A stretch of DNA of 64,000 bases from Macrostomum lignano (GCA_002269645.1 NIVC01003094.1:1-64000); one strand, 5' to 3'; shown: positions 1,713 through 21,934, numbered from the stretch's first letter. A program made the numbers and translations. The notes: a model not told the origin generated them from the letters alone.

Positions 1713-1987
1713 TAGTCACTTTGTTAAAATTACTCTTAAGTATTTTTGGAATAAAAAAGCGCAACTGAAAACTTATCAAGTTATTTGCCAGCTTAAATAG
1801 TTATAGAGATAGAGAGCGTCTGCTAAATAGATTTAAGATAAAGAGATGGCGCACAAAATAAGAGCTGTGACAATTCCAATGATCAACTGATCGTGCCCTA
1901 AAATTAAGTCATATTAATTATTTTTTCTCTGCTAGCTGCATGTCAAGCGCAGTCAAATCCATCACTAGCTGGTCCCTGACTCGCCGG

Positions 1988-4847
1988 CTAATACGTTGGA
2001 CACCAGCTAGAAGCGTTCTTGACCGCGGTGACAAAAATCAGCAGCAAGACGGCCACAGAGCAGCTGACGGAGCAGATTATCAGCAGGCGGTCAATCGCTG
2101 AGCCAATCTGCTGCCACTCGGATCCCGGACTGGTTTTGATTGTTGTCATGGAAACCGACTCGAGCGATTGGGCTTGGTTGCTCTCCTTGCAGTTCTCAAC
2201 GCTTTGCTGCAAAAATTGTGCGACAGTTGCTAACTGCATCCGAGTGAGTTATTAAAGACTCAGAACTTTATGCTCACCACAGTGTTCTTCCAGCCGCACA
2301 GGCGGTTGAGGAACAGCAGCCTCAGCACTGGGCTGCTCACAGCCTCCCGCGATGCAGCTCTCCTGTAGCACAGGTGCACAACTATGCTGCCGATTGTGCT
2401 CAGAGCGGTCACAGCCATGGCCACCGTGAAGTACCAGGCTGGGGATGGGCAGAGACAGACTTGGCTCAGTGTAGCTGCATAGCACAGCACAGCACAGCAC
2501 AGCACAGCACAATACAGCACAGCACAGCACAGCACAGCACAGCACAATACAGCACAGTACAGCACAGCACAGCACAGCACAGCACAGCACAGCACAACAC
2601 AGCACAGCACAGCACAGCACAGCACAGCACAGCACAGCACAGCACACATCAATAGCCATACACTCTGACTCACTGAGCACTGGAACAGACTCGCTCTGAG
2701 CAGGGGTGATGCTGCCCGCCAGCTGCAGGAACACACTCATTGACAGCAGGATGGCCACATTCAGTGCCAGTCGGTCGCCCGAGTCCGCTGGCAGGAGAAA
2801 GCCGAAGATGCAGGTGGCGAGGATGAGGGCGCTGGGGATGATGAGCACGATGACGTAGTAGAGGGGCCGCCTCTGCAAAGGGATGGGGAGCGGGAGACTG
2901 AGCGGGCACTTAATGCCGAGCCTCGGGGACCTTTATATACGAGTATCTAGTTTCTATCTCACCTTGAAGCTGACAGTGATATTCACTATGTCGTGTTGTC
3001 CCATCTTACTATTCCAGGATGTATTGACATTGGTGACGCAGAATTCATTATTTTGGCTAGCAGTCACGACAATCTGCTGGTCATTGGGTCTTGGTAAAGC
3101 CTTCAGCCTGATGTATTTACTACCCTTCGCTACCGAGGACAGGTAGATTGAGCAGTGCTGGGAGTCGAACGGGAAATCGTTCAGCTTCATCTTGCACTTG
3201 TTGGTTGTGCCGTAGGACAGCAGTGCCGTGACCTGGCCATTCGCGAGCACCTTCGCTAGCAGCCTGTTCTTCTCGAAGCTGCGAATGTCGATGCTATGAG
3301 AGAGGTTGAGTAGCTTTTAAGTGAGTTGGTGTCAAAAGTGCAATAATCATCGTATACTTTTTTATAAGCTTTAGTGAATCATATTTGAGTTAGTAGCCAG
3401 CCAAAGATCATGAAAGATACATCGCTTCATATCTTTTTACTTATCATTATAAGTAAAGTACCAGTCAGAGGTTTGAATTATAAGCCGCAAAAACACCAAA
3501 TATTTCTAATACTGAATACCACGGACAACTAAAGCAACGTACAGGACGCGACACTGTACGAGCTAAATCTATACAAAATGTTTTGAAGGCCACTGTTCGC
3601 CGAGAAATACACTATGTAGATAGAAAGTTTTCATTTTTTCAGCTCAAAAATTGTTATTGCTTTCAATAGGAGGCAGACCCAATGCTCATCTTTGAGTTGT
3701 CCTTGGCTTACTGTGTAACAATATGTGTAACAGAAATGATAAAATAGATGCATACGAGCTAAAACTAAAGATTCGAGCCGTGCCATGCATTTTAATGATT
3801 TTTTAGGTACAGGAAATGTACGTAGAATATGAAATTAACATAGAATCCCAATTTTCCGAACAAAGAGCTTTACGAATATCAATAGAGATCTTATCCAAAG
3901 ATGAGCATTGCGTCTGCCTCCTATCGAAAGCAATAACAATTTTTATGCTGAAAAAAGAGAACTTCCTATCTCCGTAGTTCTACCATGTCCTTCTACTTTA
4001 GTAGTCCTTGCTGAATACTACTTTCGATTGTTGGCAATTCAGTAGTATCGACTAATTTTGAATCAATTTTTATCAGGAGCGAATCTGGTGATTGGCCAGT
4101 TGTGCCGTCTGAACGGATTTTGCAATGGTTCGCTCCTTCATCCAACGTGGAGCTGTGGGATTTCGAGGAGTTTGAGACGCGATCCCGGACGAGAAGAGAA
4201 GATAAGAGCAACTTTTGCACTTGAGCTATGGAGCTAATAAACTGAAATCTGATGTCGCACTCACGGCCTCATCACAATGACATCCGGCACCCAAATCATG
4301 TCGAGTGGCAGGAAGATTTCGTCAGTTGTCAGCAGCTCAGCATTGCCCGACCTGTCCCAGGCCAGTCTCCTGTCAGTCCATTGCTTGGGGGCGGAAGAGT
4401 TACAAAGGTTTTTTTCAGCATGAATGTAACATCAATATTTCTAATAACTCATCAAGCTTACCAGCATTATGTAGCTGTCAAGAGAAAACAACTGCTTCAC
4501 ATCATTCTGGAACAGCACAAGATGGAGCATCGTTATCGGACAGGGGTTAATTGAATTAGCGCTAGCGCTACATCACTATTTTTGGACATCTATGGTATTT
4601 ACTGGTGCCAACTCACCACTTCAAGCAGCTCGTTGACAAGGCAGTCCACAGTAACCAAGGTAGCGGTGCCATTGTCCTGCGGCGGAGCCGCCTCCTTGCA
4701 GTACCTGGCGGTCAGGTTCAGCCATCGGATCACCTGCTCCTCTCCAGATGCCGCTTCTTCTGTTTGAGAATGCACTCCTGATGACAGCAAGACGAGCACT
4801 GCTACGCAGAGTCTGCAGCAGAGGTCTGAGTATTGTTGAGTCCGCAT
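1988..4847 (-). CDS. Cys-loop ligand-gated ion channel, nAChR-like non-alpha, paralogue A (7 exons)
   Basis: Exons 4847-4617, 4506-4462 (45 nt), 4383-4265 (QWTDRRLAW..IWVPD), 3293-2963 (Cys-loop CKMKLNDFPFDSQHC), 2872-2674 (M1-M2), 2438-2278 (M3), 2233-1988 (M4 EWQQIGSAIDRLL). All GT-AG with consistent phases and no frameshift. Confidence 0.93.
2480..2647. repeat. (CAGCA)n in intron 5 of paralogue A
   Basis: Direct reading; the same repeat occupies the same intron in B, C and D. Confidence 0.97.
3611..3978. repeat. ~84-bp inverted repeat pair (3611-3694 / 3896-3978) in intron 3 of paralogue A; dispersed repeat family
   Basis: Arms match as reverse complements with few mismatches. Related sequence occurs at ~39935-40000 and ~61360-61450. 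Confidence 0.7.
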
Positions 4848-6513
4848 CGATCTATTCGGGTAGGAGCGCAGGCTCACACAGCAGTATTTGCCAAGTATCA
4901 CAGCGCCAGACTGCTAGCAGTTCACCAAACTAAGTAAGCAGAGCATGAACTGATGTAGACAAGCCTCTTATATATACATACTAGAGCAAATGCAGCCTTT
5001 TGCTATAACCAATAAGCTGATTGCGATTGCTGAGCTGAGTGAATGCGACGCTGATAAAGCAGTTGGTGGCATATTGGCCTGCCGTTTCCCCGACTCACTT
5101 TGCTCAGCGACTGCAAGGCTTTAATTAACAGTCACGACAGTTAAACCAAGCACTGAGCAGAGCACACAAAGGGCCGGGTTAGCATGGTGCTCAAATATTG
5201 AATTAGTAGAAGCTATCGCTGGGAAGCTTCAGAGTTGAATTTGTTTAAGCTGTGAGCAAGCGAAGTGACCATGGCAACATTTTTCGAGAAAGTGAACTTT
5301 CCGGTGCCCTTGCAGTTCACTGCCTAACGGATGAGAAAGTCAGGGCCGCTGTACACCCAGTGTGAGCGAGTGCGTAATCCGTATATGTACTTGGCAGCGT
5401 CCAAGGTACTCAACTTGAAGCAGACTAGAGTGAGTTCAGCTGCGCGCCACTTCAATTCGGCGACTCAAACTTTAATTAATGAGAGTCCGTGCAGCTTATA
5501 AACTTTCGTGCTGTCGTCCGTCAGACACATGGGTTTGATTCCGAGAAGAACAGTTAGTTTTCTGAGTTGCTTCAACTATTGGATATTGTTCAGAGTTGCC
5601 TAATTAGATTCTATTGACTCGGCTCTCTTCGTCACTGATGCACCGAATCAATTTGCTTAAGTGCTACTCAATTGTTTGCTTCCAGCCACCTAGCCAGTGC
5701 CCCGGCCGTATTGTCATGCAATTGTCCAATTTGTCAACTCTAGCTGTTCATCAAATATTATCCGTAAGAGTGCGTGACGCTTACGGTGTGGTTTGTGACC
5801 GGTCGGATGTTCTTTCTCTCCGGCCTCCGTCGCGCCCCGTCTCCGTCTCTCTGGCGCACCCACCTCCCCCCGATCTGGCTTTAAGGCCTTCTTCTCGCGT
5901 TGATTTGCCTCCCCTTTGTCTGTTTGCAGGGACTGCTAAAAATAGCATTACTGTGGTGCCAGCTCTAGAAGTCCCTGGCGATCCCTTGTAGGTGTTCGCG
6001 TCTGGCTTCTTTCGTGCTCTGACTGTGGAGTTAATGAAACCATTTATACTTCCGACTCAGTACCATCTTCATTTTAAAAAGCTCCCTTCTCAAACTCACT
6101 GCACTTACATGTAATAGACACACGGAAAGCTAAACCTTGACAATATCAGTATCGTAAAATCTAATCGAATGAAGAATTCTGAAGCTAATGTTTTTCACTA
6201 ATATAGGTACAAGTAAAACCCACGATGCCCTCAACTCCGGAGGTAACTACATCAGTCCGAAAGATTCAGTCTTCAGTTGCCTTGAAACAAGTGCAATGCG
6301 TCAAAATGATTATTATAGTTTAACAAGATAAAATATAGTTGTAATATATATCTGCTGCGGCAGTTTGGTTAACTGACCTATTGGTTCAATAATTAGCTGC
6401 TAGTGTTGGCTGCTGGAGTATTGCACGGTACACAGCTGATGTATTAGTTTATTAAGGAGTTAGTTTAGTAGTCCTTAAACTCGAATTGATGAGCTCGGTC
6501 ATCAGCACCCCGC

Positions 6514-9028
6514 CTAGTTGCTCTTGTTAGCGGTGGCGCCCAGCAACACGGTGACGGCCACGGAGAGGCTCACAACGCAGACCAGCATCAGTCTGTCCAG
6601 CACGCAGCTCACATGCAGCCACTCGTCTCCAGGATCGCGGCAGCCGTCCTGGACGCTGGCGAGGCTGCTGCTGGATGATGAGGCGGCCGCGGCCTTCGAT
6701 GTGGCGCTGCTGACTCGGTAATTCTGGCGAAAAATGAGAGCAATTTAAAGATTCGACAAGCTGTCAGCAGATAAAGTAAGACCAACGTCGGAAAATCTAA
6801 GTACATATGAGAGAGCACGCACCGACCAGCCGCACAGGCGGTTGAGGAACAGCAGCCTCAGCGCCGGGTTGCTCACAGCCTCCCGCGATGCAGCTCTCCT
6901 GTAGCACAGGTGCACAACTATGCTGCCGATTGTGCTCAGAGCGGTCACAGCCATGGCCACCGTGAAGTACCAGGCTATGGATGGGCAGAGACAGACTTGA
7001 CTCAGTGTAGCTGCACAGCACAGCACAGCACAGCACAGCACAGCACAGCACAGCACAGCACAGCACAGCACAGCACAGCACAATACAGCACAGCACAGCA
7101 CAGCACAGCACAGCACAGCACAGCACAGCACAGTACAGCACAGCACAATACAGCACAGTACAGCACAGCACAGCACAGCACAGCACAGCACAGCACAGTA
7201 CAGCACAGCACAGCACAGCACAGCACAGCACAGCACAGCACACATCAATAGCCATACACTTGGACTCACTGAGCACTGGAACAGACTCGCTCTGAGCAGG
7301 AGTGATGCTGCCCGCCAGCTGCAGGAACACACTCATTGACAGCAGGATGGCCACATTCAGTGCCAGTCGGTCGCCCGAGTCCGCTGGCAGGAGAAAGCCG
7401 AAGATGCAGGTGGCGAGGATGAGGGCGCTGGGGATGATGAGCACGATGACGTAGTAGAGGGGCCGCCTCTGCAATGGGATGGGGAGCGGGAGGCTGAGCG
7501 GGTAGTCAGAACAGAGACTGCTGTGCAATGAGTGAGTACCCAGCACCTCTCAAACATGCGGTATTTTACCTCAAATTCAACTGTAACCAAAAGCTTCTTG
7601 AATTGGGGAAATTGGGTGCTGAAGTCAATAATGACTGAGCGCACGCTAGTAACACAGTACTCATTGTTCTGCAGGTTTATCTCGCTGTAGTTGATAGGCA
7701 GCCCACTTTTTATCTCAAGCTGCAAAAGCGTCTGCTTCTTCGCCGCTGACGAGAAAGAAAACTGGCAAACTTGCGTGTCAAATGGAAAGTCGCGCATCTT
7801 CAGCGGGCACTTGATGGTTATGCCGAGCGGCGTTTCCAGTTTCATCCTACCGTTCGAGCTCACGTCAACCAAGAATTTGTTGGTTTCAAAGCTTTTGACG
7901 TCAACCCTGTCAAAATATTTACGAGAGTATTTGATAAAAGACTGGACTGTCTATGGCCGAGTGCAGTTCTGTGGCATTGGCTTTGGTTGGCTTTATTGTC
8001 TATGGCCGAGTGCAGCTCTGTGGCAGTGGCTTTGGTTGGCTTTATTGTCTATGGCCGAGTGCAGCTCTGTGGCAGTGGCTTTGGTTGGCTTTATTGTCTA
8101 TGGCCGAGTGCAGCTCTGTGGCAGTGGCTTTGATAGGCTTTATTGTCTATGGCCGAGTGCAGTTCTGTGGCAGTGGCTTTGGTTGGCTTTATTGTCTATG
8201 GCCGAGTGCAGCTCTGTGGCAGTGGCTTTGGTTGGCTTTATTGTCTATGGCCGAGTGCAGCTCTGTGGCAGTGGCTTTGATAGGCTTTTTTGATAGGCTG
8301 CAGCGAAAGGGGACTCTCCACCTGATCGGCTTTATTATCAACCAATATAAAAATCAATGCCATATTAAATTGGCAAACAGAACTCACGGATGGCTCAGAC
8401 TCAAGTCCGGAAGCCACACATAGTCTGTTGGTAGAAAGATCTTCTCAAACTTGGCCAGTTTGGGATCGTCGGTCTCGTTCCAGGCGAGTCGCGAATCTGT
8501 CCAAAACTGAAAATTCAGAGTTGTTCGAGGGCGGCCGAGGCAGGTGTTGCGGTAGATGTGCAGCTGCTACTCATTCAGGTAACTTAAAGGTGGATTATCT
8601 AGGAGTCAAACTCACCATCATTATCCAGAGATCCAAGGACACTAGCTGATTCACAACATCCTACAAAGCGTTTTTTCAGACTGATTTAACTGCTTTTAAA
8701 CCGATTACAGTGGCTATCGCATTTTTGAGTAAAAGTTTGAGCAAAAACCTGTAAGTTTGGGGAGTTAAAATACGATATACAATACTGCACCCTCAGCGGC
8801 ACTCACCACGCTGCTGATTCTGATGAGTTTAGTTCTAAACTTGATTACATTGGCCGTGCCGTTGTCTGGCGGAGGTGCCGCCACCTTGTAGTAGCCGGAG
8901 GTGATGTTCAGCAGCCGGATGATCCTCTCTTCGGTTGACATCCTGGAAGGCTCCTTCGCCGAGCAGACGGCGGCCTCGTGGGCTAGCAACGTCAATGTCA
9001 ACGCCAGAATAATCCCCTGTCTCAGCAT
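6514..9028 (-). CDS. Cys-loop ligand-gated ion channel, nAChR-like non-alpha, paralogue B (7 exons)
   Basis: Exons 9028-8807 (signal peptide), 8660-8616, 8506-8388 (FWTDSRLAW..VWLPD), 7906-7570 (CPLKMRDFPFDTQVC), 7468-7270, 6974-6823, 6723-6514 (EWLHVSCVLDRLML). AATAAA on the minus strand at ~6448-6453. Confidence 0.92.
7012..7243. repeat. (CAGCA)n in intron 5 of paralogue B
   Basis: Direct reading. Confidence 0.97.
7947..8292. repeat. 49-bp minisatellite, ~7 copies, intron 3 of paralogue B
   Basis: Unit CTTTGGTTGGCTTTATTGTCTATGGCCGAGTGCAGCTCTGTGGCAGTGG. Confidence 0.92.
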
Positions 9029-9510
9029 TGCTCGCTGGCTGAATTCAGCTGTGCTAATCCGGCTATCGACACCGAATCCCCCGATGGTTTTATTCGTTTA
9101 ATATTTCCCACAGGGGAGAACCACTTTGGGAAATTGCTGAATTAGATTCTGACAACTCCCCGCTCTCTAATTGACTAGAATGCAGCTGGGATAGCATCCC
9201 GTAAATAGGTTATCGTCTAAGTCAATTTGATGGACTGGCAAGCATTGTTTGCTTTCAGCATTATCCTCTGCCTTTTTAGCCACCAATCACTCCCAATTTA
9301 CTCGTCGTAATGCAAATTTGCGAATTTGCGTTGACCAGAAAATGGCTGCTGAGCAAACTTTTTGCTACAATAGACACTAAGTCCATTAAAGGCTCGTTAA
9401 TCAAAGGTCCATTATTGGTACTGATAAAAATTGGAGGTTGCGACAGACACGGAATGGGCGGAGACAGGCTTGGCTCAGTGTAGCTTTTTTGTTACCAATG
9501 CGTTTTTTTT

Positions 9511-10613
9511 GGTTAAAAAGCACATTGGTAACAGAACGGGAGGTTAAAAAGCACATTGGTAACAGAACGGGAGGTTGAAACAGACACATTGGTAACATAA
9601 CGGGAGGTTAAAAAACACATTGGTAACAGAACGGGAGGTTAAAAAACACATTGGTAACATAACGGGAGGTTAAAAAGCACATTGGTAACAGAACGGGAGG
9701 TTGAAACAGACACATTGGTAACAGAACGGGAGGTTAAAACAGACACATTGGTAACAGAACGGGAGGTTAAAACAGACACATTGGTAACAGAACGGGAGGT
9801 TAAAAAACACATTGGTAACATAACGGGAGGTTAAAACAGACACATTGGTAACAGAACGGGAGGTTAAAACAGACACATTGGTAACAGAACGGGAGGTTAA
9901 AAAACACATTGGTAACAGAACGGGAGGTTAAAACAGACACATTGGTAACAGAACGGGAGGTTGAAACAGACACATTGGTAACAGAACGGGAGGTTGAAAC
10001 AGACACATTGGTAACAGAACGGGAGGTTAAAACAGACACATTGGTAACAGAACGGGAGGTTAAAACAGACACATTGGTAACAGAACGGGAGGTTAAAACA
10101 GACACATTGGTAACAGAACGGGAGGTTGAAACAGACACATTGGTAACAGAACGGGAGGTTAAAAAACACATTGGTAACATAACGGGAGGTTAAAACAGAC
10201 ACATTGGTAACAGAACGGGAGGTTGAAACAGACACATTGGTAACAGAACGGGAGGTTGAAACAGACACATTGGTAACAGAACGGGAGGTTGAAACAGACA
10301 CATTGGTAACAGAACGGGAGGTTGAAACAGACACATTGGTAACAGAACGGGAGGTTGAAACAGACACATTGGTAACATAACGGGAGGTTAAAACAGACAC
10401 ATTGGTAACATAACGGGAGGTTAAAACAGACACATTGGTAACAGAACGGGAGGTTAAAAAGCACATTGGTAACAGAACGGGAGGTTAAAAAGCACATTGG
10501 TAACAGAACGGGAGGTTAAAAAGCACATTGGTAACGGAACGGGAGGTTAAAAAGCACATTGGTAACAGACCGGGAGGTTAAAACAGACACATTGGTAACA
10601 GAACGGGAGGTTG
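9511..10613. repeat. 33-bp minisatellite (with shorter variants), ~34 copies
   Basis: Unit AAAACAGACACATTGGTAACAGAACGGGAGGTT. Confidence 0.95.
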
Positions 10614-10764
10614 AGCTTGGGACACCTACACCTACACAGGGGACACCTTGGGACAGCTGCGAAGGGACACAATATTCTTACTATACAAGTGAGTCGATAA
10701 ATTATTGTTTAAATTACGACTCGAATGACAGCTGCTCTCACAATATTTGAATTAATAAATAGCT

Positions 10765-11240
10765 ATTGACTCATTGGTACACAGCCATTGGCTCATTGGT
10801 ACACAGACAAAAGTTCTTTGGTACCCAGCCATTGGCTCATTGGTACACAGACAAATAGTTCTTTGGTACACAGTCATTGGCTCATTGGTATACAGACAAA
10901 AGTTCTTTGGTACACAGTGATTGGCTCATTGGTACACAGACAAATAGTTCTTTGGTACACAGCCATTGGCTCATTGGTACACAGACAAAAGTTCTTTGGT
11001 ACACAGTAATTGGCTCATTGGTACACAGCCATTGGCTCATTTGTACACAGCCATTGGCTCATTTGTACACAGCCATTGGCTCATTGGTACACAGTTATTG
11101 GCTCATTGGTACACAGTTATTGGCTCATTGGTACACAGACAAATAGTTCTTTGGTACACAGCCATTGGCTCATTGGTACACAGTTATTGGCTCATTGGCA
11201 CACAGTTATTAGCTCATCGGTACACAGTTATTGGCTCGTT
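10765..11240. repeat. 21/41-bp minisatellite ATTGGCTCATTGGTACACAG(CC/TT)
   Basis: Direct reading. Confidence 0.9.
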
Positions 11241-11322
11241 TAAAAACAGTTATAATTTTATGATGCCATTCAGATGATTTTACTAGTGTGTCACGGTTAG
11301 TAAGAGGTCGGTGTCAAATCCA

Positions 11323-14300
11323 TCAGCAAGCTACAAAGCCGCTATTGGCAGCTGTGACGACAAGCAGCCCGCCAACAGCTGCAGCGGACAGGACAGCGCA
11401 GGCAATCAGCAGGCGGTCCACTACAGAGCCGATGTGACGCCACGCATCCGCGGGGTCGCTGCCTTGAAAACCGCACAGGCGGTTGAGGAACAACAGCCTC
11501 AGCACTGGGCTGCTCACAGCCTCCCGCGATGCAGCTCTCCTGTAGCACAGGTGCACAACTATGCTGCCGATTGTGCTCAGAGCGGTCACAGCCATGGCCA
11601 CCGTGAAGTACCAGGCTGGGGATGGGCAGAGACAGGCTTGGCTCAGTGTAGCTGCACAGCACAGCACAGCACAGTACAGCACAGCACAGCACAGCACAGC
11701 ACAGCACAGCACAGCACAGCACAGCACAGCACAGCACAGCACAGCACAGCACAGCACAGCACAGCACAGCACAGTACAGCACAGCACAGCACAGTACAGC
11801 ACAGCACAGCACAGCACAGCACAGCACAACACAGCACAGCACAGCACAGCACAGCACAGCACAGCACAGCACAGCACAGCACAGCCCAGCACAGCATAGT
11901 ATAACACAGCACAGCACAGCACAGCACAGCACAGCACAGCACAGCACAGCACAGCACAGCACAGCACAGCACAGCACAGCACAACACAGCACAGCACAGC
12001 ACAGCACAGCACAGCACAGCACAGCACACATCAATAGCCATACACTCTGACTCACTGAGCACTGGAACGGACTCGCTCTGAGCAGGAGTGATGCTGCCCG
12101 CCAGCTGCAGGAACACACTCATTGACAGCAGGATGGCCACATTCAGTGCCAGTCGGTCGCCCGAGTCCGCTGGCAGGAGAAAGCCGAAGATGCAGGTGGC
12201 GAGGATGAGGGCGCTGGGGATGATGAGCACGATGATGTAGTAGAGGGGCCGCCTCTGCAAAGGGGTGGGGTGCGGGAGGCTGAGCGGGCACTCAGCACAG
12301 AGACTGCTGTGCAATGGGGTGGGGAGCGGGAGGCTGAGCGGGCACTTAGCACAGAGACTGCTGTGCAATGGGGTGGGGAGTGAGAGGCTGAGTGATGCAG
12401 CTGGTAAAGCACAGATGTTCAACTCATCTGCTACTTGCCTTGAAGCTGATTGAAACCTGAACTTTTTCGTAATATTCATAGATAGATACTTTTGAAGTTT
12501 CAATGTGGCTGATGCAGAATTCGTTGCTCTCCTTGTTAAGATCGGCATAGGTTTTGTTTGCCTCCTGTCCCAATTCAAGCTGCAAATCCGCAGGCGTTTT
12601 CACAGCCGAGGAGAAGGTTGCGTTACACTGCTGGGAGTCGAAGGGAAAATACGCCATGTTCATCGGACACCTGCTGGTTACTCCGTATGGAATGCCGATT
12701 ATTACAATTCCATTTTGGTAGACAATAGACAAGTGTTTATTGGCCTCATAATTGCGGATTTCGACTCTGCGTTGCAGGAGTAGGTATTGCTCTGTGTTCG
12801 CCACAATGACAAGGCATTGCTTTTAAAGTTACATGATACATGCACATCTACATGATACATGCACATCTACATAATACATGCACATCTACATGATACATGC
12901 ACATCTACATGATACATGCACATCTACATGATACATGCAAAACTACATGATGCATGCACAGCTACATGATACATGCACAGCTACATGATACATGCACAGT
13001 TACATGATACACATCCGCAACTACATGATACACATAAACAGTTACATGATACACATACGCAACTACCGGTACATGATACACATACACAGTTACATGAAAC
13101 ACATACAGAACTACATGTTACTCATACGAAACTCTAAAACACAACCACAGTTAGTTACATTATACACATATACAGTTAAATAATACACATACACAGCTAC
13201 ATGATACACATACGCAACTACATGATACACATATACAGTTACATAATACACATACGCAACTAAATGATACACATACACAGTTACATGATACACATACGCA
13301 ACTACATGATACACATAAACAGTTACATGATACACACACGCAACTACATGATAAACATACACAGTTACATGATGCATGTACTTACGGGTGGTCCACGGTC
13401 ACATCGGGCAGCCACAGCCAGTCAGTCGGCACGAAGATTTTCTCAACCTTGGCTAAGCTTTCATCGCTTGTGTCATTCCAGGCTAATCGGGCATCTGTCC
13501 ATCTCTGAATAAATTTTTTTATTAATAGCACATTGCTATGCTCGTAACTGCATATGAGATTTGATTGAGCTGAGATGCATATGAGATTTGAATGAGCTGA
13601 GATGCATATGAGATTCGATTGAGCTGAGATACATATGAGATTTGATTGAGACGAGATACCTATGAGATTTGATTGAGCTGAAATACCTATGAGATTTGAT
13701 TGAGGTGAGATACCTATGAGATTTGATTGAGGTGAGATACCTATGAGATTTGGTTGAGGTGAGATACCTATGAGAGTTGATTGAGGTGAGATACCTATGA
13801 GAGTTGATTGAGGTGAGATGCATATGAGATTTGGTTGACCTGAGGTGCATATGAAATTCGATTGAGCTGAGATGCATATGAGATTTGGTTGAGGTGAGAT
13901 ACCTATGAGATTTGATTTAGGTGAGATACCTATGAGAGTTGATTTAGGTGAGATACCTATGAGATTTGATTGAGCTGAGGTGCACACACTGAGATGTAAA
14001 CGATGGCTTACCAGTATCATCCAGAGGTCAATGGACACTTGCTGTTTCACAATATCCTGAATGGCAGCAGCAACAGCTTTATTACACAAAGGTAGAGTTG
14101 AGCACAAGATGCACAAGCTGCACTCACCACGCTGCTCAATCGAACAACTTTAATGGACACAATGACAACATTCGCTGTGCCATTGTCTGGAGGCGGCGCC
14201 GCGCCCTTGCAGTAGCCGGAGGTGAGGTTCAGCAGCTCGACAATTCTCTCCTGGTTGGACTTCCTGGATTGCCCGGCCGAAGTCAGAACCCAAGCGAGCG

Positions 14301-14358
14301 CGAGCAGCATTTGCAGCAGGCCGGCTGCCCGGTGAGTCAGTGCTCGAGGAGGCTTCAT
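11323..14358 (-). CDS. Cys-loop ligand-gated ion channel, nAChR-like non-alpha, paralogue C (6 exons, minimal M3-M4 loop)
   Basis: Exons 14358-14128, 14056-14012, 13504-13386 (RWTDARLAW..LWLPD), 12766-12439 (CPMNMAYFPFDSQQC; GC donor AG|GCAAGT), 12254-12056, 11615-11323 (M3 and M4 in one exon). Confidence 0.92.
11652..12028. repeat. (CAGCA)n in intron 5 of paralogue C (longest copy)
   Basis: Direct reading. Confidence 0.97.
12829..13376. repeat. 19-21-bp ACATGATAC(A/ATGC)... minisatellite, intron 3 of C
   Basis: Direct reading. Confidence 0.85.
13548..13985. repeat. 27-bp minisatellite ATATGAGATTTGATTGAGCTGAGATGC, intron 2 of C
   Basis: Direct reading. Confidence 0.9.
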
Positions 14359-14620
14359 CAGCGAGGCTGGACTAATTCCGGGCTCCAGTGCTGCAGAATA
14401 AACTATTAATATTCATAGCCAGTTATCAGTTAGCAAGCAGTCAGACAGTTTGGCTCCATAAAAAATTGCGCAAATACAGAGAGGGGGGGCTCATTTGATT
14501 TGGCTGATCAGCATCTGAGCTGGGCTTAAGTAATTAATCCAGCAGTTCTGTTTGCCGAATAATAACAATGCTCAGACACGCACGCAAACATCCTGAGTTT
14601 GTTGACTTTAGACAGTTGGA

Positions 14621-15144
14621 ATCATTAGCATCGTTAGCACCATTAGCACTATTAGCATCATTAGCACCATTAGCACTATTAGCATCATTAGCACCATTAG
14701 CATCATTAGCATCAATAGCATCATTAGCATCATTAGCATCATTAGCACCATTAGCACCATTAGCACCATTAGCACTATTAGCATCATTAGCACCATTAGC
14801 ACTATTAGCATCATTAGCACCATTAGCACTATTAGCATCATTAGCACCATTAGCATCATTAGCATCGTTAGCACCATTAGCACCATTAGCACTATTAGCA
14901 TCATTAGCATCAATAGCATCATTAGCATCATTAGCATCATTAGCACCATTAGCACCATTAGCATCAATAGCACCATTAGCATTATTAGCATCATTAGCAT
15001 CAATAGCATCATTAGCATCATTAGCATCATTAGCACCATTAGCACCATTAGCATCAATAGCATCATTAGCATCATTAGCACCATTAGCACCATTAGCATC
15101 AATAGCATAATCAGCATAATCAGCATCATTAGCACCATTAGCAC
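14621..15144. repeat. 9-bp TAGCA(T/C)CAT repeat upstream of C
   Basis: Direct reading. Confidence 0.95.
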
Positions 15145-15908
15145 TGGAAACCATTGACATGACATGGCCACTAGTATTACTATAAACTAACATCAGCTCA
15201 GGTTTGTTAGTTTTACTTCTGCAATGTCGATCATAAATTTTGTAGGATGAGCAAAAATAACTCGACCTCTGTGTCCGTTTGAAGCTCGTTGCAACTCAAA
15301 AGTCAATCGACATATTCTGGACACTCACCTGGCTGGCTCTACATCAACTGCGATCACGACAGCGACAGCGCCTTTTTTAAGGGCCTTCCCATCAAGAAGC
15401 TGGAAGCGATCGATACTTTCATCTTCATCGTCCGTTTTTGTGATCGGCTCGTGACCTTCAACACCGACATCACCGCCGTTTTCGGGATGGTCGGGCGTGT
15501 TAAATCCGGATGCTCATGCGGTCGGCGCTGCATCACAACATCCGATTCAGTGCCCAGGCAGTACCAAATTCTCGCTAATCTCGTCTCGACCTGTGTCCGT
15601 TTGAAGCTCATTGAAACTCAAAAGTCTTCGCGCCTCAAGGTGTCAGCTGTTTGCGTTTCAAAGATGGCTCTTTTTCGGGGCGATCGTTGCGATCGGAGCG
15701 GCTTTCCTTCTCAAGAGCCACTCTTGCGATCTTTGCGCACTTCCCTCTTCTCCCGATGTGTATGGCAAAATTCCAGTAGTTGAAAAGTTGTGGATTTAAT
15801 GTTTAAAAAAACTGAAAACTTCAAATCTTGCCAATGCAGTTGGCAGCTGGAATCGGCCTGCAACAAAATCCGCACGATTTGCGGCGGCCTTCTGCTTCAT
15901 TTTTTTTA

Positions 15909-16330
15909 GGATTCGAACCTGAGACTATGATAAGGTGAGGTAAGCAGCATTCGAACCAAGGACCATTATAGGATGCAATAAGCAGGATTCGAACCTAGGA
16001 CAATTTTGGAACTCACTAAGTAGGATTCGAACCTAGGACTATTATAGGATCAACTATATGGATTCGAACCTAGGACTATTATAGGATCAACTATATGGAT
16101 TCGAACCTAGGACTATTATAGGATCAACTATATGGATTCAAAACTAGGACTATTATAGGATCAACTATACGGATTCGAACCTAGGACTATTATAAGATCA
16201 ACTATATGGATTCGAACCTAGGACTATTATAGGATCAACTATATGGATTCGAACCTAGGACTATTATAGGATCAACCATATGGATTCGAACCTAGGACCA
16301 TTAAAGGACTCACTAAGATTCAAACCTAAA
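15909..16330. repeat. 37-bp minisatellite containing a Pol III B-box (GGTTCGAATCC on the minus strand), ~12 copies
   Basis: Unit GGATTCGAACCTAGGACTATTATAGGATCAACTATAT; 9 intact GGATTCGAACC motifs. Confidence 0.9.
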
Positions 16331-16493
16331 ACTACTGGGAGAGTTTATTTCCTATAGCATATCAGGAAAATTAATAAATATCCAGATAATATCGATGACA
16401 GAGGATTATTAGAAAGATGCAGCTTCATAGAACAGAGGAGCTCAGTAAGCAGGCGTCAGCGATCAGGCACGGTGTCCGATGATTGAGCCGGAA

Positions 16494-19400
16494 TCAGAAT
16501 TCAGAAAATCTTATTTTTCTCAAAGCGGGCTCGCAGTCGCCGCTCCCCGCCGCGGTGAGAGCCAGACAGATCAGAATGCCAGCTGAAGCAACGATCGCGC
16601 CGAAGGCCAGCAGCCGATCGATGATGCGACCGATTTGAGGCCACTCGGCAGTTTCCATGGAAGTCGTTGCTGGGGCGACGCTCGTTTGCTTGCCGACCTG
16701 GTCAGCCCAGGCGGAGTCGTCATCGGCCTGCTTTGGGGCGGAATGAAATGCTCAGGTGAAAATTTAGAGGCAGGCATGGGGCTCGAACTCAGGAGCTCCA
16801 GACAGAGTACACATCAGATTTAGGAAGTCAGAACCATTGCCATGTAAAAGTCCAGAATCTCTGCTAATTAATCTAAAATGCGCTAAATAACAAATTTACA
16901 AGCAGAACTCTTAGCTCGTCTCACCACAGTGTTCTTCCAGCCGCACAGGCGGTTGAGGAACAGCAGCCTCAGCACTGGGTTGCTCACAGCCTCCCGCGAT
17001 GCAGCTCTCCTGTAGCACAGGTGCACAACTATGCTGCCGATTGTGCTCAGAGCGGTCACAGCCATGGCCACCGTGAAGTACCAGGCTGGGGATGGGCAGA
17101 GACAGGCTTGACTCAGTGTAGCTGCATAGCACAGCACAGCACAGCACAGCACAGCACAGCACAGCACAGCACAGCACAGCACAGCACAATACAGCACAGC
17201 ACAGCACAGCACAGCACAGCACAGCACAATACAGCACAGCACAGCACACCACAGCACAGCACAGCACAGCACTGCACACATCAATAGCCATACACTTGGA
17301 CTCACTGAGCACTGGAACAGACTCGCTCTGAGCAGGAGTGATGCTGCCCGCCAGCTGCAGGAACACACTCATTGACAGCAGGATGGCCACATTCAGTGCC
17401 AGTCGGTCGCCCGAGTCCGCTGGCAGGAGAAAGCCGAAGATGCAGGTGGCGAGGATGAGGGCGCTGGGGATGATGAGCACTATGACGTAGTACATCGGCA
17501 GTCTCTGGAGTGTTGAGTGTAAATATTTGGCCAGAAATTGAAACAAAATATTTGCGTTATAACAATGCAGTCGTCAGTCAACTAAAAGTCTGTACCTTAA
17601 AAGTAATGATAACCTCCATCTGGTGGTAACTAGAATAGACCCATTTCAGAATCGAGTCAACGGCAGTGACGCAGTACTCGTTGCTGCGGAGAAACCGAAT
17701 CGATAGGTCAATAGCGATGCTTCGCACCACTCTGAGCCGCAGCGAATTGGGCGGTCTCTGGCCCGAGGCCATGCTGAAATTGCACTGCTGTTTGTCAAAC
17801 GGAAAGCTGGCCAGCTGCATGTTGCATTTTTTTGTTAAGCCGAATGCCAGCTTGGTTTGCACCTGACCGTCTGAGCTGATCTCGGCTAGCAGTTTGCTCT
17901 GATCGTGGTTGCGAATCTCCACACTGGAAATGTTCAGGCTATGGTTGTGAAGTTCGGGCACAAGGAAAATAAGGATACTCGTAGAAGTGCAGGAGAGATA
18001 AGGATAGGAATACAGGTGAGATAAAAAAGGATAGGAATAAAGGTGAGATAAGGCTAGGAATACAGGTGAGATAAGGATAGGAATACAGGTGAGATAAGGC
18101 TAGGAATACAGGTGAGATAAGGATAGGAATACAGGTGAGATAAGGATAGGAATACAGGTGATATAAGGCTAGGAATACAGGTGGGATAAGGATAGGAATA
18201 CAGGTGAGATAAGGATAGGAATACAGGTGAGATAAGGCTAGGAATACAGGTGAGATAAAAAGGATAGGAATAAAGGTGAGATAAGGCTAGGAATACAGGT
18301 GAGATATGGATAGGAATACAGGTGAGATAAGGATAGGAATACAGGTGAGATATGGATAGGAATACAGGTGAGATAAGGATAGGAATACAGGTGAGATAAG
18401 GATAGGTATACAGGTGAGATAAGGCTAGGAATACAGGTGAGATATGGATATAAATACAGGTGAGATAAGGATAGGAATACAGGTGAGATAAGGATAGGAA
18501 TACAGGTGAGATAAGGCTAGGAATACAGGTGAGATAAGGAGAGGAATACAGGTGAGATATGGATAGGAATACAGGTGAGATAAGGAGAGGAATACAGGTG
18601 AGATAAGGATAGGAATACAGGTGAGATAAGGATAGGTATACAGGTGAGATAAGGCTAGGAATACAGGTGAGATATGGATATAAATACAGGTGAGATAAGG
18701 ATAGGAATACAGGTGAGATAAGGATAGGAATACAGGCGAGATAAGGCTAGGAATACAGGTGAGATAAGGAGAGGAATACAGGTGAGATATGGATAGGAAT
18801 ACAGGTGAGATAAGGCTAGGAATACAGGTGAGATAAGGAGAGGAATACAGGTGAGATATGGATAGGAATACAGGTGAGATAAGGATAGGAATACAGGTGA
18901 GATAAGGATAGGTATACAGGTGAGATAAGGCTAGGAATACAGGTGAGATATGGATATAAATACAGGTGAGATAAGGATAGGAATACAGGTGAGATAAGGA
19001 TAGGAATACAGGCGAGATAAGGCTAGGAATACAGGTGAGATAAGGAGAGGAATACAGGTGAGATATGGATAGGAATACAGGTGAGATAAGGCTAGGAATA
19101 CAGGTGAGATAAGGAGAGGAATACAGGTGAGATATGGATAGGAATACAGGTGAGATAAGGATAGGAATACAGGTGAGATAAGGATAGGTATACAGGTGAG
19201 ATAAGGCTAGGAATACAGGTGAGATATGGATATAAATACAGGTGAGATAAGGATAGGAATACAGATGAGAAAAGGATATAGGAACACTCGGAAATAAAGA
19301 TACGAGTAGAAACACAAAAATTAGTATTGAATAAGAAGTCAATAAAGAATCCCAGCCGTGCGATGTGTGAAAGTTGATGGCATAAATTACAAGCGGCACC

Positions 19401-21467
19401 CACCAATGTCTGACACAGTCTCCAAAGTGGATTTAATTATAAGCCGCACCATTTTAAAGTAAAGTGTCTTTAAAGTGTCTGTCAAGCCGCATGGGTGGTC
19501 AAATATTGCTAATGGATGCCCAGAGCCTGTCAGTTTTAGACACCATTCGGAGCAAATAGATAAGTAGGATAGTTATCAAACTCACGGCTGGCTAACGCTG
19601 ATGTCAGGTGTCCACAGCCAATCCAGAGGCGCGTAGATGGCGCCAACTGCGGCCAGTTCCGGTCTGGCGATTCCTTTCCAGGCTAGTCGGGGGTCTGTCC
19701 AGTTCTGTTGTATTGACATCAGTGTGGCAGAAATGATTGATGAGTCAACACGTTGGCTTTGGAGTGAGGCTGCGGGTTGGAAGGTTGTCCCAAGGTTGAT
19801 GCAAATAGATCGATGAGGAAGGTGTATGCTTGTATGTGTGCTTGGAAGTAACGAGAAGGCTGTGTTTGGGAAGTGAGGCTGGCATGGGAGTCAGGGGGAG
19901 AGGGTGGTATGAGAGTCAGGGGTGAGCTTTGTGGCATAAGAGTCAGGGGGAGAGGGTGGTATGAGAGTCAGGGGTGAGCTTTGTGGCATAAGAGTCAGGG
20001 GGAGAGGGTGGTATGAGAGTCAGGGGTGAGCTTTGTGGCATAAGAGTCAGGGGGAGAGGGTGGTATGAGAGTCAGGGGTGAGGTTTGTGGCATAAGAGTC
20101 AGGGGGAGAGGGTGGTATGAGAGTCAGGGGTGAGGTTTGTGGCATAAGAGTCAGGGGGAGAGGGTGGTATGAGAGTCAGGGGTGAGGTTTGTGGCATAAG
20201 AGTCAGGGGGAGAGGGTGGTATGAGAGTCAGGGGTGAGGTTTGTGGCATGAGAGTCAGGGGTGAGGTTTGTGGCATGAGAGTCAGGGGGAGAGGGTGGTA
20301 TGAGAGTCAGGGGTGAGGTTTGTGGCATGAGAGTCAGGGGATGAGGCTTGTGGCATGAGAGTCAGGGGTGAGGCTTGTAGCATGAGAGTCAGGGAGTGAG
20401 GCTTGTGGCATGAGAGTCAGGGATTGTGAGGGTGGCATAAGAGTCAGGGGTGAGGGTGGCATGAGAGTCAGGGATTGTGAGGGTGGCATGAGAGTCAGGG
20501 ATTGTGAGGGTGGCATGAGAGTCAGGGATTGTGAGGGTGGCATGAGAGTCAGGGGGTGAGGTGGCATGAGAGTCAGGGATTGTGAGGGTGGCATGAGAGT
20601 CAGGGGGTGAGGTGGCATGAGAGTCAGGGGTGAGGGTGGCATGAGAGTCAGGGATTGTGAGGGTGGCACGAGAGTCAGGGGTGAGGGTGGCATGAGAGTC
20701 AGAGAGTGAGGTGGCATGAGAGTCAGGGGTGAGGGTGGCATGAGAGTCAGGGGTGAGGGTGGCACGAGAGTCATGGGTGGTGGTTGGCATGAGAGTCAGA
20801 GAGTGAGGTGGCATGAGAGTCAGGGGTGAGGGTGGCACGAGAGTCATGGGTGGTGGTTGGCATGAGAGTCAGGGGTGAGGGTGGCATGAGAGTCAGGGGT
20901 GAGGGTGGCACGAGAGTCATGGGTGGTGGTTGGCATGAGAGTCAGAGAGTGAGGTGGCATGAGAGTCAGGGGTGAGGGTGGCACGAGAGTCATGGGTGGT
21001 GGTTGGCATGAAAGTCAGGGGTGAGGGTGGCATGAGAGTCAGGGGTGAGGGTGGCACGAGAGTCATGGGTGGTGGTTGGCATGAGAGTCAGAGAGTGAGG
21101 TGGCATGAGAGTCAGTGCATGTTTAACAGACTGCTTACCATGGAAACTCTGTTCTCCAGCACAATGAACTGCTTGACCATGTCCTGTAAAGAGCACAAAT
21201 AAATTAACAAATGAGAATGCGATGATTTAGCGCAAATCCGGACAAACCGGCTCTACTTACGACATCAATGAGCTTGACTATCTCAATCATGATGGTCACA
21301 ACGACGGCCGTGCCATTGATCGGTCTCGGACTGGCGCCTTTGACATAGCCGCCGTTGGTGAGATTCAGCATCCGGATGATCTGCTCATCGACAGACGCGT
21401 CATCGGCGACAGGTTCCGCCGCATTGGTTGCTAGGAGCAGCTGTGCTAAAATCCCTGCCAGTAGCAT
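16494..21467 (-). CDS. Cys-loop ligand-gated ion channel, nAChR-like non-alpha, paralogue D (7 exons)
   Basis: Exons 21467-21261, 21183-21139, 19704-19586 (NWTDPRLAW..LWTPD), 17923-17596 (CNMQLASFPFDKQQC), 17504-17306, 17085-16925, 16727-16494 (EWPQIGRIIDRLL). Confidence 0.92.
17125..17280. repeat. (CAGCA)n in intron 5 of paralogue D
   Basis: Direct reading. Confidence 0.97.
17986..19275. repeat. 23-bp minisatellite TAAGGATAGGAATACAGGTGAGA, ~55 copies, intron 3 of D
   Basis: Direct reading. Confidence 0.95.
19884..21114. repeat. G-rich ~24-bp minisatellite GGCATGAGAGTCAGGGGTGAGGGT, intron 2 of D
   Basis: Direct reading; the same family occurs at 27155-27540. Confidence 0.93.
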
Positions 21468-21934
21468 GATTCAGAACTCGCTGTCCAGTGTATCCGGGAC
21501 GTGTGGTGGGGCTGCTTCCCTATCAGAGGGTCTGTATAGATATACAGGTAAGTCAGGGTATATTTGCAGGCGTTGTCGGTGACGAAAAATACACACTGGC
21601 ACTGGTAGTGTTTGAACAGGCCAGTTGGTCAAACAGATTCAGCCATCGGATCAGCCATTGGCAAATTGAATGGCGAACAGTTACTTAACAATTGTGCTTT
21701 AGCCGAAAATGGTTGTTTGAGCACTATCATTCTTTGCTTTAGGGATAAGGGACAAAATTCGTTTGTCATGTGATGGACGGTTTTTTATAGCGAACTTTAA
21801 CAGCAGCCTTGAAATAGATGAGCTACTCTCTCTAGCAGCATCTTTATTACCTGCAAATATTAGAATATGAGCCCGGCTAGGGCTGACGCGCTCGTAACTG
21901 ACCAACGAATGAATAAATTTACATTAGCCTGGAT

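What the first reader, a model, noticed from the sequence alone, without database searches (positions are those of the whole stretch)
1988..21467. Tandem array of nAChR-like subunits lacking the acetylcholine-binding aromatic box: candidate chemoreceptors
Seen: all four keep the 13-residue Cys-loop, W.D.RL.W, W.PD and the nAChR-type 45-nt exon. The loop A Tyr position is M/S/D/S, the loop B Trp position is V/A/A/G (SSVAK, SSAAK, SSAVK, ASGQR), and loop C is short without CC (NSKMGQHD, STQFPQF, IYEYYE, VYSSYH). Loop D varies Y/W/W/R. M2 has -1' Asp and no -2' Pro, so it is cation-type. Established: alpha-nAChR agonist binding needs those residues, and cephalopod chemotactile receptors are nAChR-derived, tandemly expanded, lack them, and sense environmental ligands. 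Inference: this may be an independent, non-cholinergic sensory channel family.
Basis: partly seen in the sequence, partly recalled or inferred. Interest (0 to 1): 0.78.

Follow-up and report, generated by a model that had tools for sequence, protein, structure and literature searches.

The report
Flatworm orphan Cys-loop receptor gene array
Four neighbouring genes of the flatworm Macrostomum lignano encode cation-channel subunits related to acetylcholine and serotonin receptors; they lack the usual transmitter-binding residues, differ widely in their outer domains and share an almost identical pore, but nothing yet shows that they are sensory receptors.

Summary
Window 1988-21467 (minus strand) holds four intact, intron-containing Cys-loop receptor genes of 404-434 aa.

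- **Organism:** Macrostomum lignano; three of the genes match its UniRef proteins.
- **Family:** they belong to a Macrostomum-only clade (95/100 bootstrap). It is 25-26% identical both to 5-HT3 receptors and to alpha-type nAChRs, so "nAChR-like" is too narrow a label. It is not the cephalopod chemotactile-receptor clade.
- **Missing aromatics:** this alone is weak evidence for a non-cholinergic role. The Torpedo nAChR gamma subunit lacks the same loop A Tyr and loop B Trp. However, the complementary face (loops D and E) is not conserved here either.
- **New finding:** a sharply bounded 540-830 bp tract is 93-100% identical between the four genes (dS 0.02-0.07). It covers M1, M2, intron 5 with a (GCACA)n repeat, and M3. 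The extracellular exons have saturated divergence (dS above 1.4, dN/dS about 0.3). This indicates gene conversion that keeps one pore under four different ligand domains.

**Verdict:** these are orphan cation-channel subunits with an unknown ligand. A sensory role is untested, and a role as auxiliary non-alpha subunits remains a serious rival. The finding is a new member of a known kind and moderately interesting.

The parts
1988..4847 (-). Gene g1 (434 aa). Exons: 4847-4617, 4506-4462 (45 nt), 4383-4265, 3293-2963, 2872-2674 (M1-M2), 2438-2278 (M3), 2206-1988 (M4 and stop).
   Evidence: Splice junctions read. Identical to M. lignano UniRef protein P0001 except that P0001 omits the 45-nt exon. 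Pfam match.
6514..9028 (-). Gene g2 (427 aa). Exons: 9028-8807, 8660-8616 (45 nt), 8506-8388, 7906-7570, 7468-7270 (M1-M2), 6974-6823 (M3), 6723-6514 (M4 and stop).
   Evidence: P0051 is 99.6% identical over the ECD, and P0002 confirms the acceptor of the M4 exon. Pfam match.
11323..14358 (-). Gene g3 (404 aa). Exons: 14358-14128, 14056-14012 (45 nt), 13504-13386, 12766-12439 (GC donor), 12254-12056 (M1-M2), 11615-11323 (M3 to M4 and stop, with no intron between them). It has the shortest M3-M4 loop.
   Evidence: No database entry for this protein. An in-frame GT donor 18 nt upstream is an alternative end for exon 4. Pfam match.
16494..21467 (-). Gene g4 (431 aa). Exons: 21467-21261, 21183-21139 (45 nt), 19704-19586, 17923-17596, 17504-17306 (M1-M2), 17085-16925 (M3), 16730-16494 (M4 and stop).
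   Evidence: P0035 is 100% identical over 139 aa, and P0003 is a mis-spliced model of the same gene. The M4 acceptor could be 16730 or 16727 (NAGNAG).
2290..2915 (-). Homogenised (gene-conversion) tract in g1: the last ~45 nt of intron 4, exon 5 (M1-M2), intron 5 and exon 6 (M3 to ...NRLCG).
   Evidence: 93-100% nucleotide identity to the other three copies where they align (the repeat region cannot be compared), against roughly 20-70% (mostly 30-60%) on either side. dS is 0.02-0.05.
6825..7510 (-). Homogenised tract in g2.
11469..12297 (-). Homogenised tract in g3.
16937..17480 (-). Homogenised tract in g4. It starts about 25 nt inside exon 5, so the pre-M1 sequence is RLPMYY rather than RRPLYY.
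2477..2646 (.). (GCACA)34 microsatellite in intron 5 of g1. The equivalent repeats are at 7013-7242 (46 copies, g2), 11654-12028 (75 copies, g3) and 17124-17278 (31 copies, g4). Each lies inside its homogenised tract, with about 200-270 nt of tract on the M1 side and about 185-190 nt on the M3 side.
   Evidence: Arm lengths computed.
23540..23653 (-). Possible extra 5' exon of g4, used by the database model P0003. It has a GT donor at 23539 and is spliced to an AG acceptor inside my exon 1 at 21440.
   Evidence: The open stretch has no in-frame ATG, so it may be a UTR or an annotation artefact.

Best explanation
The region holds four intact, tandemly duplicated genes of Macrostomum lignano. 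They encode subunits of pentameric Cys-loop channels of the cationic nAChR/5-HT3 branch.

They belong to a Macrostomum-specific clade whose members have lost the canonical agonist-binding aromatic residues. In the four genes here neither face of the classical pocket is conserved. The gating elements are kept: Cys-loop FPFD, pre-M1 Arg, M2 9' Leu and the M2-M3 Pro. So is a cation-type M2 (-4' Asp, -1' Asp, no -2' Pro).

The most likely working model is inferred, not shown. The subunits form cation channels, alone or with each other, that are gated by something other than acetylcholine at a remodelled subunit interface. The four divergent extracellular domains would give different specificities.

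One further point is shown. Non-allelic gene conversion keeps the M1-M2-M3 pore module and its intron nearly identical in all four genes. An inference from this is that conversion may start at the (GCACA)n repeat in intron 5. As a result the array behaves as variable ligand domains on one constant pore. The M3-M4 loop is unusually short, from about 50 residues in g3 to about 80 in g1 and g4. Whether the channels sit in sensory cells, neurons or elsewhere is unknown.
For: - **Gene models and domains:**
- **Organism and independent models:** UniRef M. lignano proteins equal g1, g2 and g4.
- **Binding-site and pore residues:**
- **Loop E:** the positions equivalent to Torpedo gamma L109/Y111/Y117/L119 are K/L/T/L, D/S/K/E, I/Y/I/G and E/S/Q/K in g1 to g4.
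- **Purifying selection:** ECD dN/dS is 0.24-0.35 and all reading frames are intact.
- **Clade:** 10 M. lignano segments are monophyletic in 95/100 NJ bootstraps. Five of the six other M. lignano segments have Ile or Ala at the loop B Trp position and none has the vicinal Cys; the sixth, P0040, is scored Trp, but its Cys-loop and loop B region could not be confirmed in the sequence.
- **Distance to outside sequences:** only 34 of 7558 hits in 1.84 billion representatives reach E <= 1e-30. The closest sequences outside the species are about 25-30% identical.
- **Conversion tract:** 93-100% nucleotide identity including intron 5, against 44-80% (mostly about 50-65%) in the ECD exons and roughly 40-65% in the M4 exon. 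dS is 0.02-0.07 against above 1.4. GC3 is 0.78-0.81 against 0.60-0.67.
- **Other M. lignano arrays:** they show only 60-83% M1-M3 identity.
Against: - No functional, expression or ligand data exist here.
- Loss of the loop A Tyr and loop B Trp also occurs in a bona fide ACh-receptor subunit, Torpedo gamma. g2 and g3 keep the loop D Trp, so a role as partner of an alpha subunit is not excluded.
- The extracellular ring of negative charge at 20' is absent (Ser), and 2' and 6' are Ala (read from the alignment). Conductance and selectivity are therefore uncertain.
- The structure model was poor (pLDDT 60.6), so the pocket could not be inspected.
- No close protein relatives from other transcriptome or genome assemblies were found. 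This gives no support for expression.
Confidence: 0.55

Rival explanations
1. The four proteins are non-alpha (auxiliary or structural) subunits of heteromeric acetylcholine-gated receptors. They would contribute no principal face and would co-assemble with alpha-type subunits encoded elsewhere, tuning pharmacology, assembly or localisation.
For: - Torpedo gamma lacks the loop A Tyr (Glu) and the loop B Trp (Gln) but keeps the loop D Trp, exactly like g2 and g3.
- 37 of 182 related segments lack an aromatic residue at loop B.
- In oyster only 33 of 132 nAChR genes are alpha-type (PMC6896357).
- An identical M1-M3 block would make the four interchangeable within one pentamer.
Against: - The loop E positions that line the complementary ACh site are charged or polar in g2 and g4, and loop D is Arg in g4 and Tyr in g1.
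- The clade is lineage-specific, not a conserved non-alpha orthogroup.
- It scores as well against 5-HT3A as against any nAChR subunit.
- The M3-M4 loop is very short compared with those of the nAChR and 5-HT3A chains aligned.
Confidence: 0.28
2. The genes are peripheral chemoreceptors that arose independently of the cephalopod chemotactile receptors and sense environmental ligands in sensory cells.
For: - The genes form a tandem, lineage-specific expansion with strongly diversified ligand-binding domains on a conserved channel core.
- Canonical transmitter-binding residues are lost on both faces.
- There is a precedent: chemotactile receptors evolved from nAChRs, with diversification in the pocket (PMC11526382).
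Against: - There is no expression or ligand evidence of any kind.
- The same sequence features fit auxiliary subunits or orphan neuronal receptors.
- Synonymous divergence in the ECD is saturated, so positive selection cannot be tested.
- Only a handful of clade members are visible at the 50% clustering level. This is not a large chemoreceptor-like repertoire.
Confidence: 0.2
3. The genes are decaying or non-functional duplicates, and the missing binding residues reflect relaxed constraint.
For: - The binding loops are highly variable.
- g3 has a GC donor and has lost an intron.
- No transcript-derived relatives were found.
Against: - All four reading frames are open across 6-7 exons with canonical junctions.
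- ECD dN/dS is 0.24-0.35 despite saturated dS.
- Gating motifs and two N-glycosylation sequons are invariant.
Confidence: 0.05

Closest known systems
Cephalopod chemotactile receptors (CRs; octopus CRT1, squid CRB1)
   Same: - Cys-loop cation-channel subunits that have lost the ACh-binding residues.
- Lineage-specific expansion.
- Diversified pocket on a conserved channel core (PMC11526382).
   Different: - The clade here is a separate, Macrostomum-only clade. No entry named as a chemotactile receptor appeared among the best 60 PDB sequences or the best 50 fold matches.
- It is as close to 5-HT3A as to nAChRs.
- No evidence of sensory expression or of hydrophobic ligands.
- The pore module is kept identical by gene conversion.
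Expanded lophotrochozoan nAChR-like genes (oyster and pearl-oyster tandem arrays; orphan Alpo4 of Alvinella)
   Same: - Tandem arrays of divergent subunits, most of them without conserved principal binding sites.
- Ligands unknown (PMC6896357, PMC10338036).
   Different: - The molluscan expansions are largely intron-poor retrogenes. These genes keep 5-6 introns, including the 45-nt exon.
- Alpo4 keeps the aromatic cage (PMC10338036); these genes do not.
- Flatworms were not covered by that survey.
Vertebrate 5-HT3A receptor
   Same: - Best-scoring solved relative (8e-39, 137 bits).
- Same domain order, the same PxDSG(E/D)R M2 start, and a similar loop C length in g2.
   Different: - Only about 25% identity.
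- 5-HT3A keeps the loop B Trp and the loop C aromatic residues.
- 5-HT3A has a much longer M3-M4 loop.
Muscle-type non-alpha nAChR subunits (for example Torpedo gamma)
   Same: - No loop A Tyr, no loop B Trp and no vicinal Cys.
- Loop D Trp present, as in g2 and g3.
   Different: - The hydrophobic and aromatic loop E residues of gamma are not conserved here.
- About 21-24% identity in the fold matches.
- Not the same orthogroup.
Partial gene conversion in clustered receptor genes (for example clustered protocadherin variable exons; from memory, not checked here)
   Same: The membrane-proximal or constant part is homogenised among tandem paralogues, while the ligand- or recognition-facing part diverges.
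   Different: - Here every gene carries its own copy of the constant module.
- The tract includes an intron with a microsatellite.
- I found no description of this pattern for pentameric ligand-gated channels.

Membership tests
Cys-loop (pentameric ligand-gated channel) superfamily | Neur_chan_LBD plus Neur_chan_memb domains in that order | tested here: met
   All four proteins match, with LBD E-values of 1e-26 to 1e-33 and TM E-values of 1e-16 to 1e-18.
Cys-loop (pentameric ligand-gated channel) superfamily | Two Cys 13 residues apart with the FPFD core; pre-M1 Arg; M2 9' Leu; four TM helices | tested here: met
   Helices M1-M4 appear in the model of P0001 (low confidence).
Cation-selective branch (nAChR / 5-HT3 / ZAC) | M2 cytoplasmic end G-(E/D)-(K/R) with no -2' Pro / -1' Ala | tested here: met
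   G-D-R in all four. Relatives have Glu (164/182) or Asp (10/182) at -1'. Ion selectivity itself was not measured.
nAChR alpha subunit | Vicinal Cys-Cys in loop C, plus loop A Tyr, loop B Trp and the loop C Tyr residues | tested here: not met
   No CC. Loop A is M/S/D/S and loop B is V/A/A/G.
nAChR family proper (as opposed to 5-HT3-like or other cationic clades) | Phylogenetic nesting within nAChR subunits to the exclusion of 5-HT3 receptors | tested here: inconclusive
   PDB scores tie: 5-HT3A 137 bits, alpha7 134, beta2 133. NJ bootstraps group the clade with 5-HT3 sequences, apart from CC-alpha subunits, in 35-64 of 100 replicates. No anionic outgroup, ZAC or CR sequences were available.
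Non-alpha complementary nAChR subunit (gamma/delta/epsilon-like) | Loop D Trp and conserved loop E residues that form the minus face of an ACh site | tested here: inconclusive
   Loop D Trp is present in g2 and g3 only. Loop E equivalents vary and are often charged. Co-assembly with an alpha subunit cannot be tested here.
Cephalopod chemotactile receptors | Membership of the cephalopod CR clade | tested here: not met
   The nearest relatives are M. lignano paralogues, then sequences of a seisonid rotifer, annelid, bivalve, nematodes and vertebrates. No CR appears among the top PDB sequence or fold matches.
Cephalopod chemotactile receptors | Expression in peripheral sensory cells and activation by poorly soluble environmental molecules | not testable with these tools
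   No expression or electrophysiology data are available.
Flatworm acetylcholine-gated chloride channels (SmACC type; from memory) | Anion-type Pro-Ala-Arg motif at the start of M2 | tested here: not met
   The motif here is S-G-D-R.

The most novel reading that the evidence does not exclude
A flatworm evolved, independently of cephalopods, a family of pentameric-channel chemoreceptors. In this reading, tandem genes diversify their ligand-binding domains while microsatellite-centred gene conversion keeps a single shared pore module. This would be a gene-conversion version of the "variable domain, constant domain" design.
Probability: 0.18. Interest if true: 0.8.

Novelty: new member of a known kind. 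Interest (0 to 1): 0.5.

Why it matters
Divergent nAChR-like expansions are known in molluscs, annelids and cephalopods. No paper found here describes such a clade in a flatworm. Macrostomum lignano is, to my knowledge, a flatworm model in which transgenesis is established, so these orphan channels could be de-orphanised and localised directly.

The sharply bounded homogenised pore module is a clean natural example of mosaic concerted evolution inside a channel gene. It marks the ligand domain and the M1-M3 pore module as separately evolving modules. It also predicts that the four subunits are interchangeable in the membrane.

If the sensory reading proved right, this would be a second independent recruitment of Cys-loop channels as chemoreceptors.

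Tried and rejected
- I used the database protein P0001 instead, which is g1 without the 45-nt exon.
- **Structure model too weak.** The AlphaFold model of P0001 had pLDDT 60.6 and pTM 0.45, too low to inspect the pocket. The Foldseek search only confirmed a pLGIC fold, with TM-scores of 0.32-0.41.
- **No genomic or transcript context.** No contig encodes exactly P0001. The Logan contig for P0102 gave only a run accession, not an organism.
- **First NJ bootstrap flawed.** It had undefined distances for the most divergent pairs, so I repeated it with a lower cap. Two of my split tests were trivially true, and I ignore them.
- **Purifying selection rejected as the cause of M1-M3 identity.** Intron 5 and the end of intron 4 are just as identical, and dS is 0.02-0.07.
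- **Assembly collapse rejected.** The copies differ in repeat number (31-75) and at a few sites. Separately deposited UniRef models of g1, g2 and g4 show the same TM sequences in the parts they cover.
- **Anion channel rejected**, because there is no PAR motif.
- **Literature.** Searches found no paper on this family in Macrostomum.


Full report
**What is there.** Reading the minus strand of 1900-21600 in three frames showed four sets of exons with Cys-loop receptor motifs. I fixed the junctions from the DNA and assembled four open reading frames of 434, 427, 404 and 431 aa.
- All introns are GT-AG except one GC-AG (AAG|GCAAGT) at the end of exon 4 of g3.
- The exon plan is the same in all four: signal peptide and N-terminus (207-231 nt), a phase-0 exon of exactly 45 nt, 119 nt, 328-337 nt (Cys-loop to loop C), 199 nt (M1-M2), 152-161 nt (M3), and an M4 exon.
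- g3 has no intron between M3 and M4.
- All four match Pfam Neur_chan_LBD and Neur_chan_memb.
- A tblastn search with the models finds no other copy in the 64 kb.

**Organism and independent support for the models.** The closest database proteins are UniRef entries of the free-living flatworm Macrostomum lignano.
- P0001 equals g1 but skips the 45-nt exon.
- P0051 and P0002 equal g2, and P0035 and P0003 equal g4. Two of these are mis-spliced.
- They confirm my choice of M4-exon acceptor for g1 and g2.
- g3 has no database entry.

An hmmalign against fish alpha9 subunits and a MAFFT alignment with sequences taken from PDB matches give the same answer. The PDB sequences were human alpha3 and beta2, Torpedo gamma and mouse 5-HT3A.
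- Loop D is Y/W/W/R, loop A is M/S/D/S, and loop B is V/A/A/G.
- There is no vicinal Cys. The Cys-loop is C-13-C with FPFD.
- M2 has -2' Gly, -1' Asp, 0' Arg, 9' Leu and 13' Val.
- Loop C is 5 residues shorter than in alpha3/alpha9 in g1, g3 and g4. In g2 it is as long as in beta2 and 5-HT3A.
- Additional points read from the same alignment: 20' is Ser rather than Glu/Asp, and 2' and 6' are Ala. There is a three-residue insertion after WxDxRLxW, which explains 119 rather than 110 nt for that exon. The usual RPV motif is replaced by APPPDNGT. A Cys in NE(F/Y)C is invariant.
- The M3-M4 loop is short, from about 50 residues in g3 to about 80 in g1 and g4.

**Where the family sits.** Against all PDB sequences, g3 scores 137 bits with mouse 5-HT3A, 134 with human alpha7, 133 with beta2 and 109 with DEG-3. 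No chemotactile receptor, ZAC or Alpo4 appears in the best 60.
- An exhaustive HMMER search with P0001 of 1.84 billion representatives gave 7558 hits, but only 34 at E <= 1e-30.
- The best hits are M. lignano paralogues at 30-38% identity (P0025, P0026, P0027, P0030, P0033, P0040). Several of these are fused predictions of further tandem arrays.
- The next hits come from an annelid, a bivalve, nematodes, a seisonid rotifer, unnamed transcript assemblies and fish or frog 5-HT3A-like genes.
- In neighbour-joining trees on 307 aligned columns, the ten M. lignano segments are monophyletic in 95 of 100 bootstraps. Their position relative to 5-HT3 receptors and CC-bearing alpha subunits is unresolved, at 35-64 of 100.
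- Mean identity of g1-g4 is 25% to the 5-HT3 group, 26% to alpha-type nAChRs and 35% to the other M. lignano members.

"nAChR-like" is thus too specific. This is a lineage-specific clade of the cationic Cys-loop branch, and it is not the cephalopod CR clade.

**Is the missing aromatic box meaningful?** Five of the six other M. lignano segments have Ile or Ala at the loop B position and none has CC; the sixth, P0040, is scored Trp, but its Cys-loop region could not be confirmed in the sequence. The loss is therefore old within this clade.

The loss is not diagnostic, however.
- Among 182 related segments from other organisms, 37 have no aromatic residue at loop B and only 75 have CC.
- Torpedo gamma is an undisputed ACh-receptor subunit. 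It reads WLPDVVLENN and FRSQTYN, that is Glu and Gln at the two positions, and it keeps the loop D Trp.
- Human beta2 and beta4 keep both residues.
- In oyster only 33 of 132 nAChR genes are alpha-type, and only 13 of those conserve the principal site (PMC6896357).

The complementary face gives it some support. The positions equivalent to gamma L109/Y111/Y117/L119 are K/L/T/L, D/S/K/E, I/Y/I/G and E/S/Q/K in g1-g4, and loop D is Arg in g4. Neither face of a canonical ACh site is conserved. The gating elements, two N-glycosylation sequons and the reading frames are all kept. ECD dN/dS is 0.24-0.35. The genes are functional, but not as classical ACh-binding subunits.

Exon by exon, nucleotide identity between the four genes is 44-80% (mostly about 50-65%) for the four ECD exons. 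It is 96-99.5% for the M1-M2 exon and 95-99% for the M3 exon.
- A genomic alignment shows a sharply bounded tract. It begins about 45 nt before exon 5, or about 25 nt inside it in g4. It runs through intron 5 and stops at ...NRLCG at the end of exon 6. On either side identity drops to roughly 20-70% (mostly 30-60%).
- Synonymous divergence is 0.02-0.07 inside the tract and 1.4 to saturation in the ECD.
- GC3 is 0.78-0.81 inside and 0.60-0.67 outside.
- Between exon 5 nt 25 and exon 6 nt 105, only two exonic sites vary among the four genes.
- Because the intron is as similar as the exons, selection on the protein cannot be the cause. Non-allelic gene conversion is the straightforward explanation.
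- Each tract contains a (GCACA)n repeat of 31-75 units, with about 200-270 nt of tract on the M1 side and about 185-190 nt on the M3 side. This suggests, as an inference, that conversion initiates at the repeat.
- At protein level the four share 37-48% of ECD positions but 97-100% of M1-M3. Neighbouring copies in other M. lignano arrays show 60-83% in M1-M3 at similar ECD identity.
- Copy-specific repeat lengths and SNPs argue against an assembly artefact, and so do the separately deposited UniRef models, which show the same TM sequences.

**Interpretation.** What is shown:
- four functional-looking subunit genes of a Macrostomum-specific cationic Cys-loop clade;
- a remodelled and mutually divergent canonical pocket;
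- one shared pore module maintained by gene conversion.

What is inferred: they form cation channels gated by something other than ACh (confidence 0.55). The identical M1-M3 would make them freely co-assembling.

The main rival is that they are auxiliary non-alpha subunits of ACh-gated heteromers (0.28). The specific sensory-chemoreceptor reading is possible but has no direct support (about 0.2). Pseudogenes are unlikely (0.05).

**What did not help.**
- Structure prediction was possible only for P0001 and was poor (pLDDT 60.6). Foldseek returned muscle nAChR, alpha7 and 5-HT3A chains at TM 0.32-0.41.
- No expression evidence could be obtained.
- No paper describing this family in Macrostomum was found. 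The survey of lophotrochozoan nAChR expansions did not include flatworms.

**Comparison and novelty.** The general phenomenon is already known from molluscs, annelids and cephalopods (PMC6896357, PMC10338036, PMC11526382). It consists of tandem, lineage-specific, nAChR-like subunits without binding residues and with unknown or non-cholinergic ligands.
- This is a new member of that kind, in a new phylum-level lineage.
- Three distinguishing traits are retention of the ancestral intron plan, a very short M3-M4 loop and a gene-conversion-maintained constant pore.
- I score interest at 0.5. It is a sound and tractable lead in a genetically accessible flatworm, but the chemoreceptor claim is at present speculation.

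Noticed in passing
window 2477-2646, 7013-7242, 11654-12028, 17124-17278: A (GCACA)n microsatellite of 31-75 units sits in the M2-M3 intron of every gene, inside the homogenised tract. It may be where conversion starts.
   Followed up: partly
window 12439 (g3 exon 4 donor) and 11615-11323: g3 uses a GC-AG intron (AAG|GCAAGT), with an in-frame GT donor 18 nt upstream as an alternative. It has lost the intron between M3 and M4, which gives it the shortest M3-M4 loop. It is also the only one of the four genes with no database protein.
   Followed up: partly
window 23540-23653 (minus strand): The UniRef model P0003 joins an upstream exon (GT donor) to an acceptor inside g4 exon 1 at 21440. The open stretch has no in-frame ATG, so the true 5' end of g4 is uncertain.
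   Followed up: partly
g3 residue C216 (NE[FY]C motif); window about 12530 in g3 and the equivalent positions in g1, g2 and g4: A third ECD cysteine is invariant in all four proteins, at the start of the strand before loop C. It replaces the Asp/Glu that follows GEW in other subunits, and there is no invariant partner cysteine.
   Followed up: no
window 7948-8292, 9511-10612, 10761-11237, 12830-13373, 13553-13979, 14621-15143, 15949-16308, 17990-19278, 19873-21115, 22094-22773: Introns and intergenic spacers of the array are packed with long minisatellites (periods of 9-89 nt, up to 1.3 kb). These account for most of the size differences between the four genes.
   Followed up: no
window 41732-47606 (minus strand) and 43960-46636: A PIG-M type GPI mannosyltransferase gene is interrupted, within an intron, by a retroelement remnant. 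The remnant has an integrase ORF (44222-45901, plus strand) flanked by 99% identical direct repeats at 43960-44262 and 46308-46636.
   Followed up: partly
window 30200-30472 (+), 32701-33450 (+), 63072-63557 (+): Other coding pieces are present: a MatE-family transporter exon, a Ras/Rab-type small GTPase, and a reverse-transcriptase fragment at the right end of the window.
   Followed up: partly
window 48000-54000 and 60000-62000: G+C content falls to 0.32-0.35 here, against 0.43-0.55 over most of the rest of the window. No long open frames have family matches in these stretches.
   Followed up: no
proteins P0025, P0026, P0174 (M. lignano, not in the window): These database proteins are fusions of two to four pLGIC units, so M. 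lignano has further tandem arrays of this clade. Their neighbouring units share 60-83% of M1-M3 at 32-47% ECD identity, which may reflect older or weaker homogenisation.
   Followed up: partly
protein P0030 (M. lignano, not in the window): The source names this clade member a C-type lectin domain-containing protein (979 aa, with the pLGIC part at residues 186-616). This could be a real fusion or a merged gene prediction.
   Followed up: no
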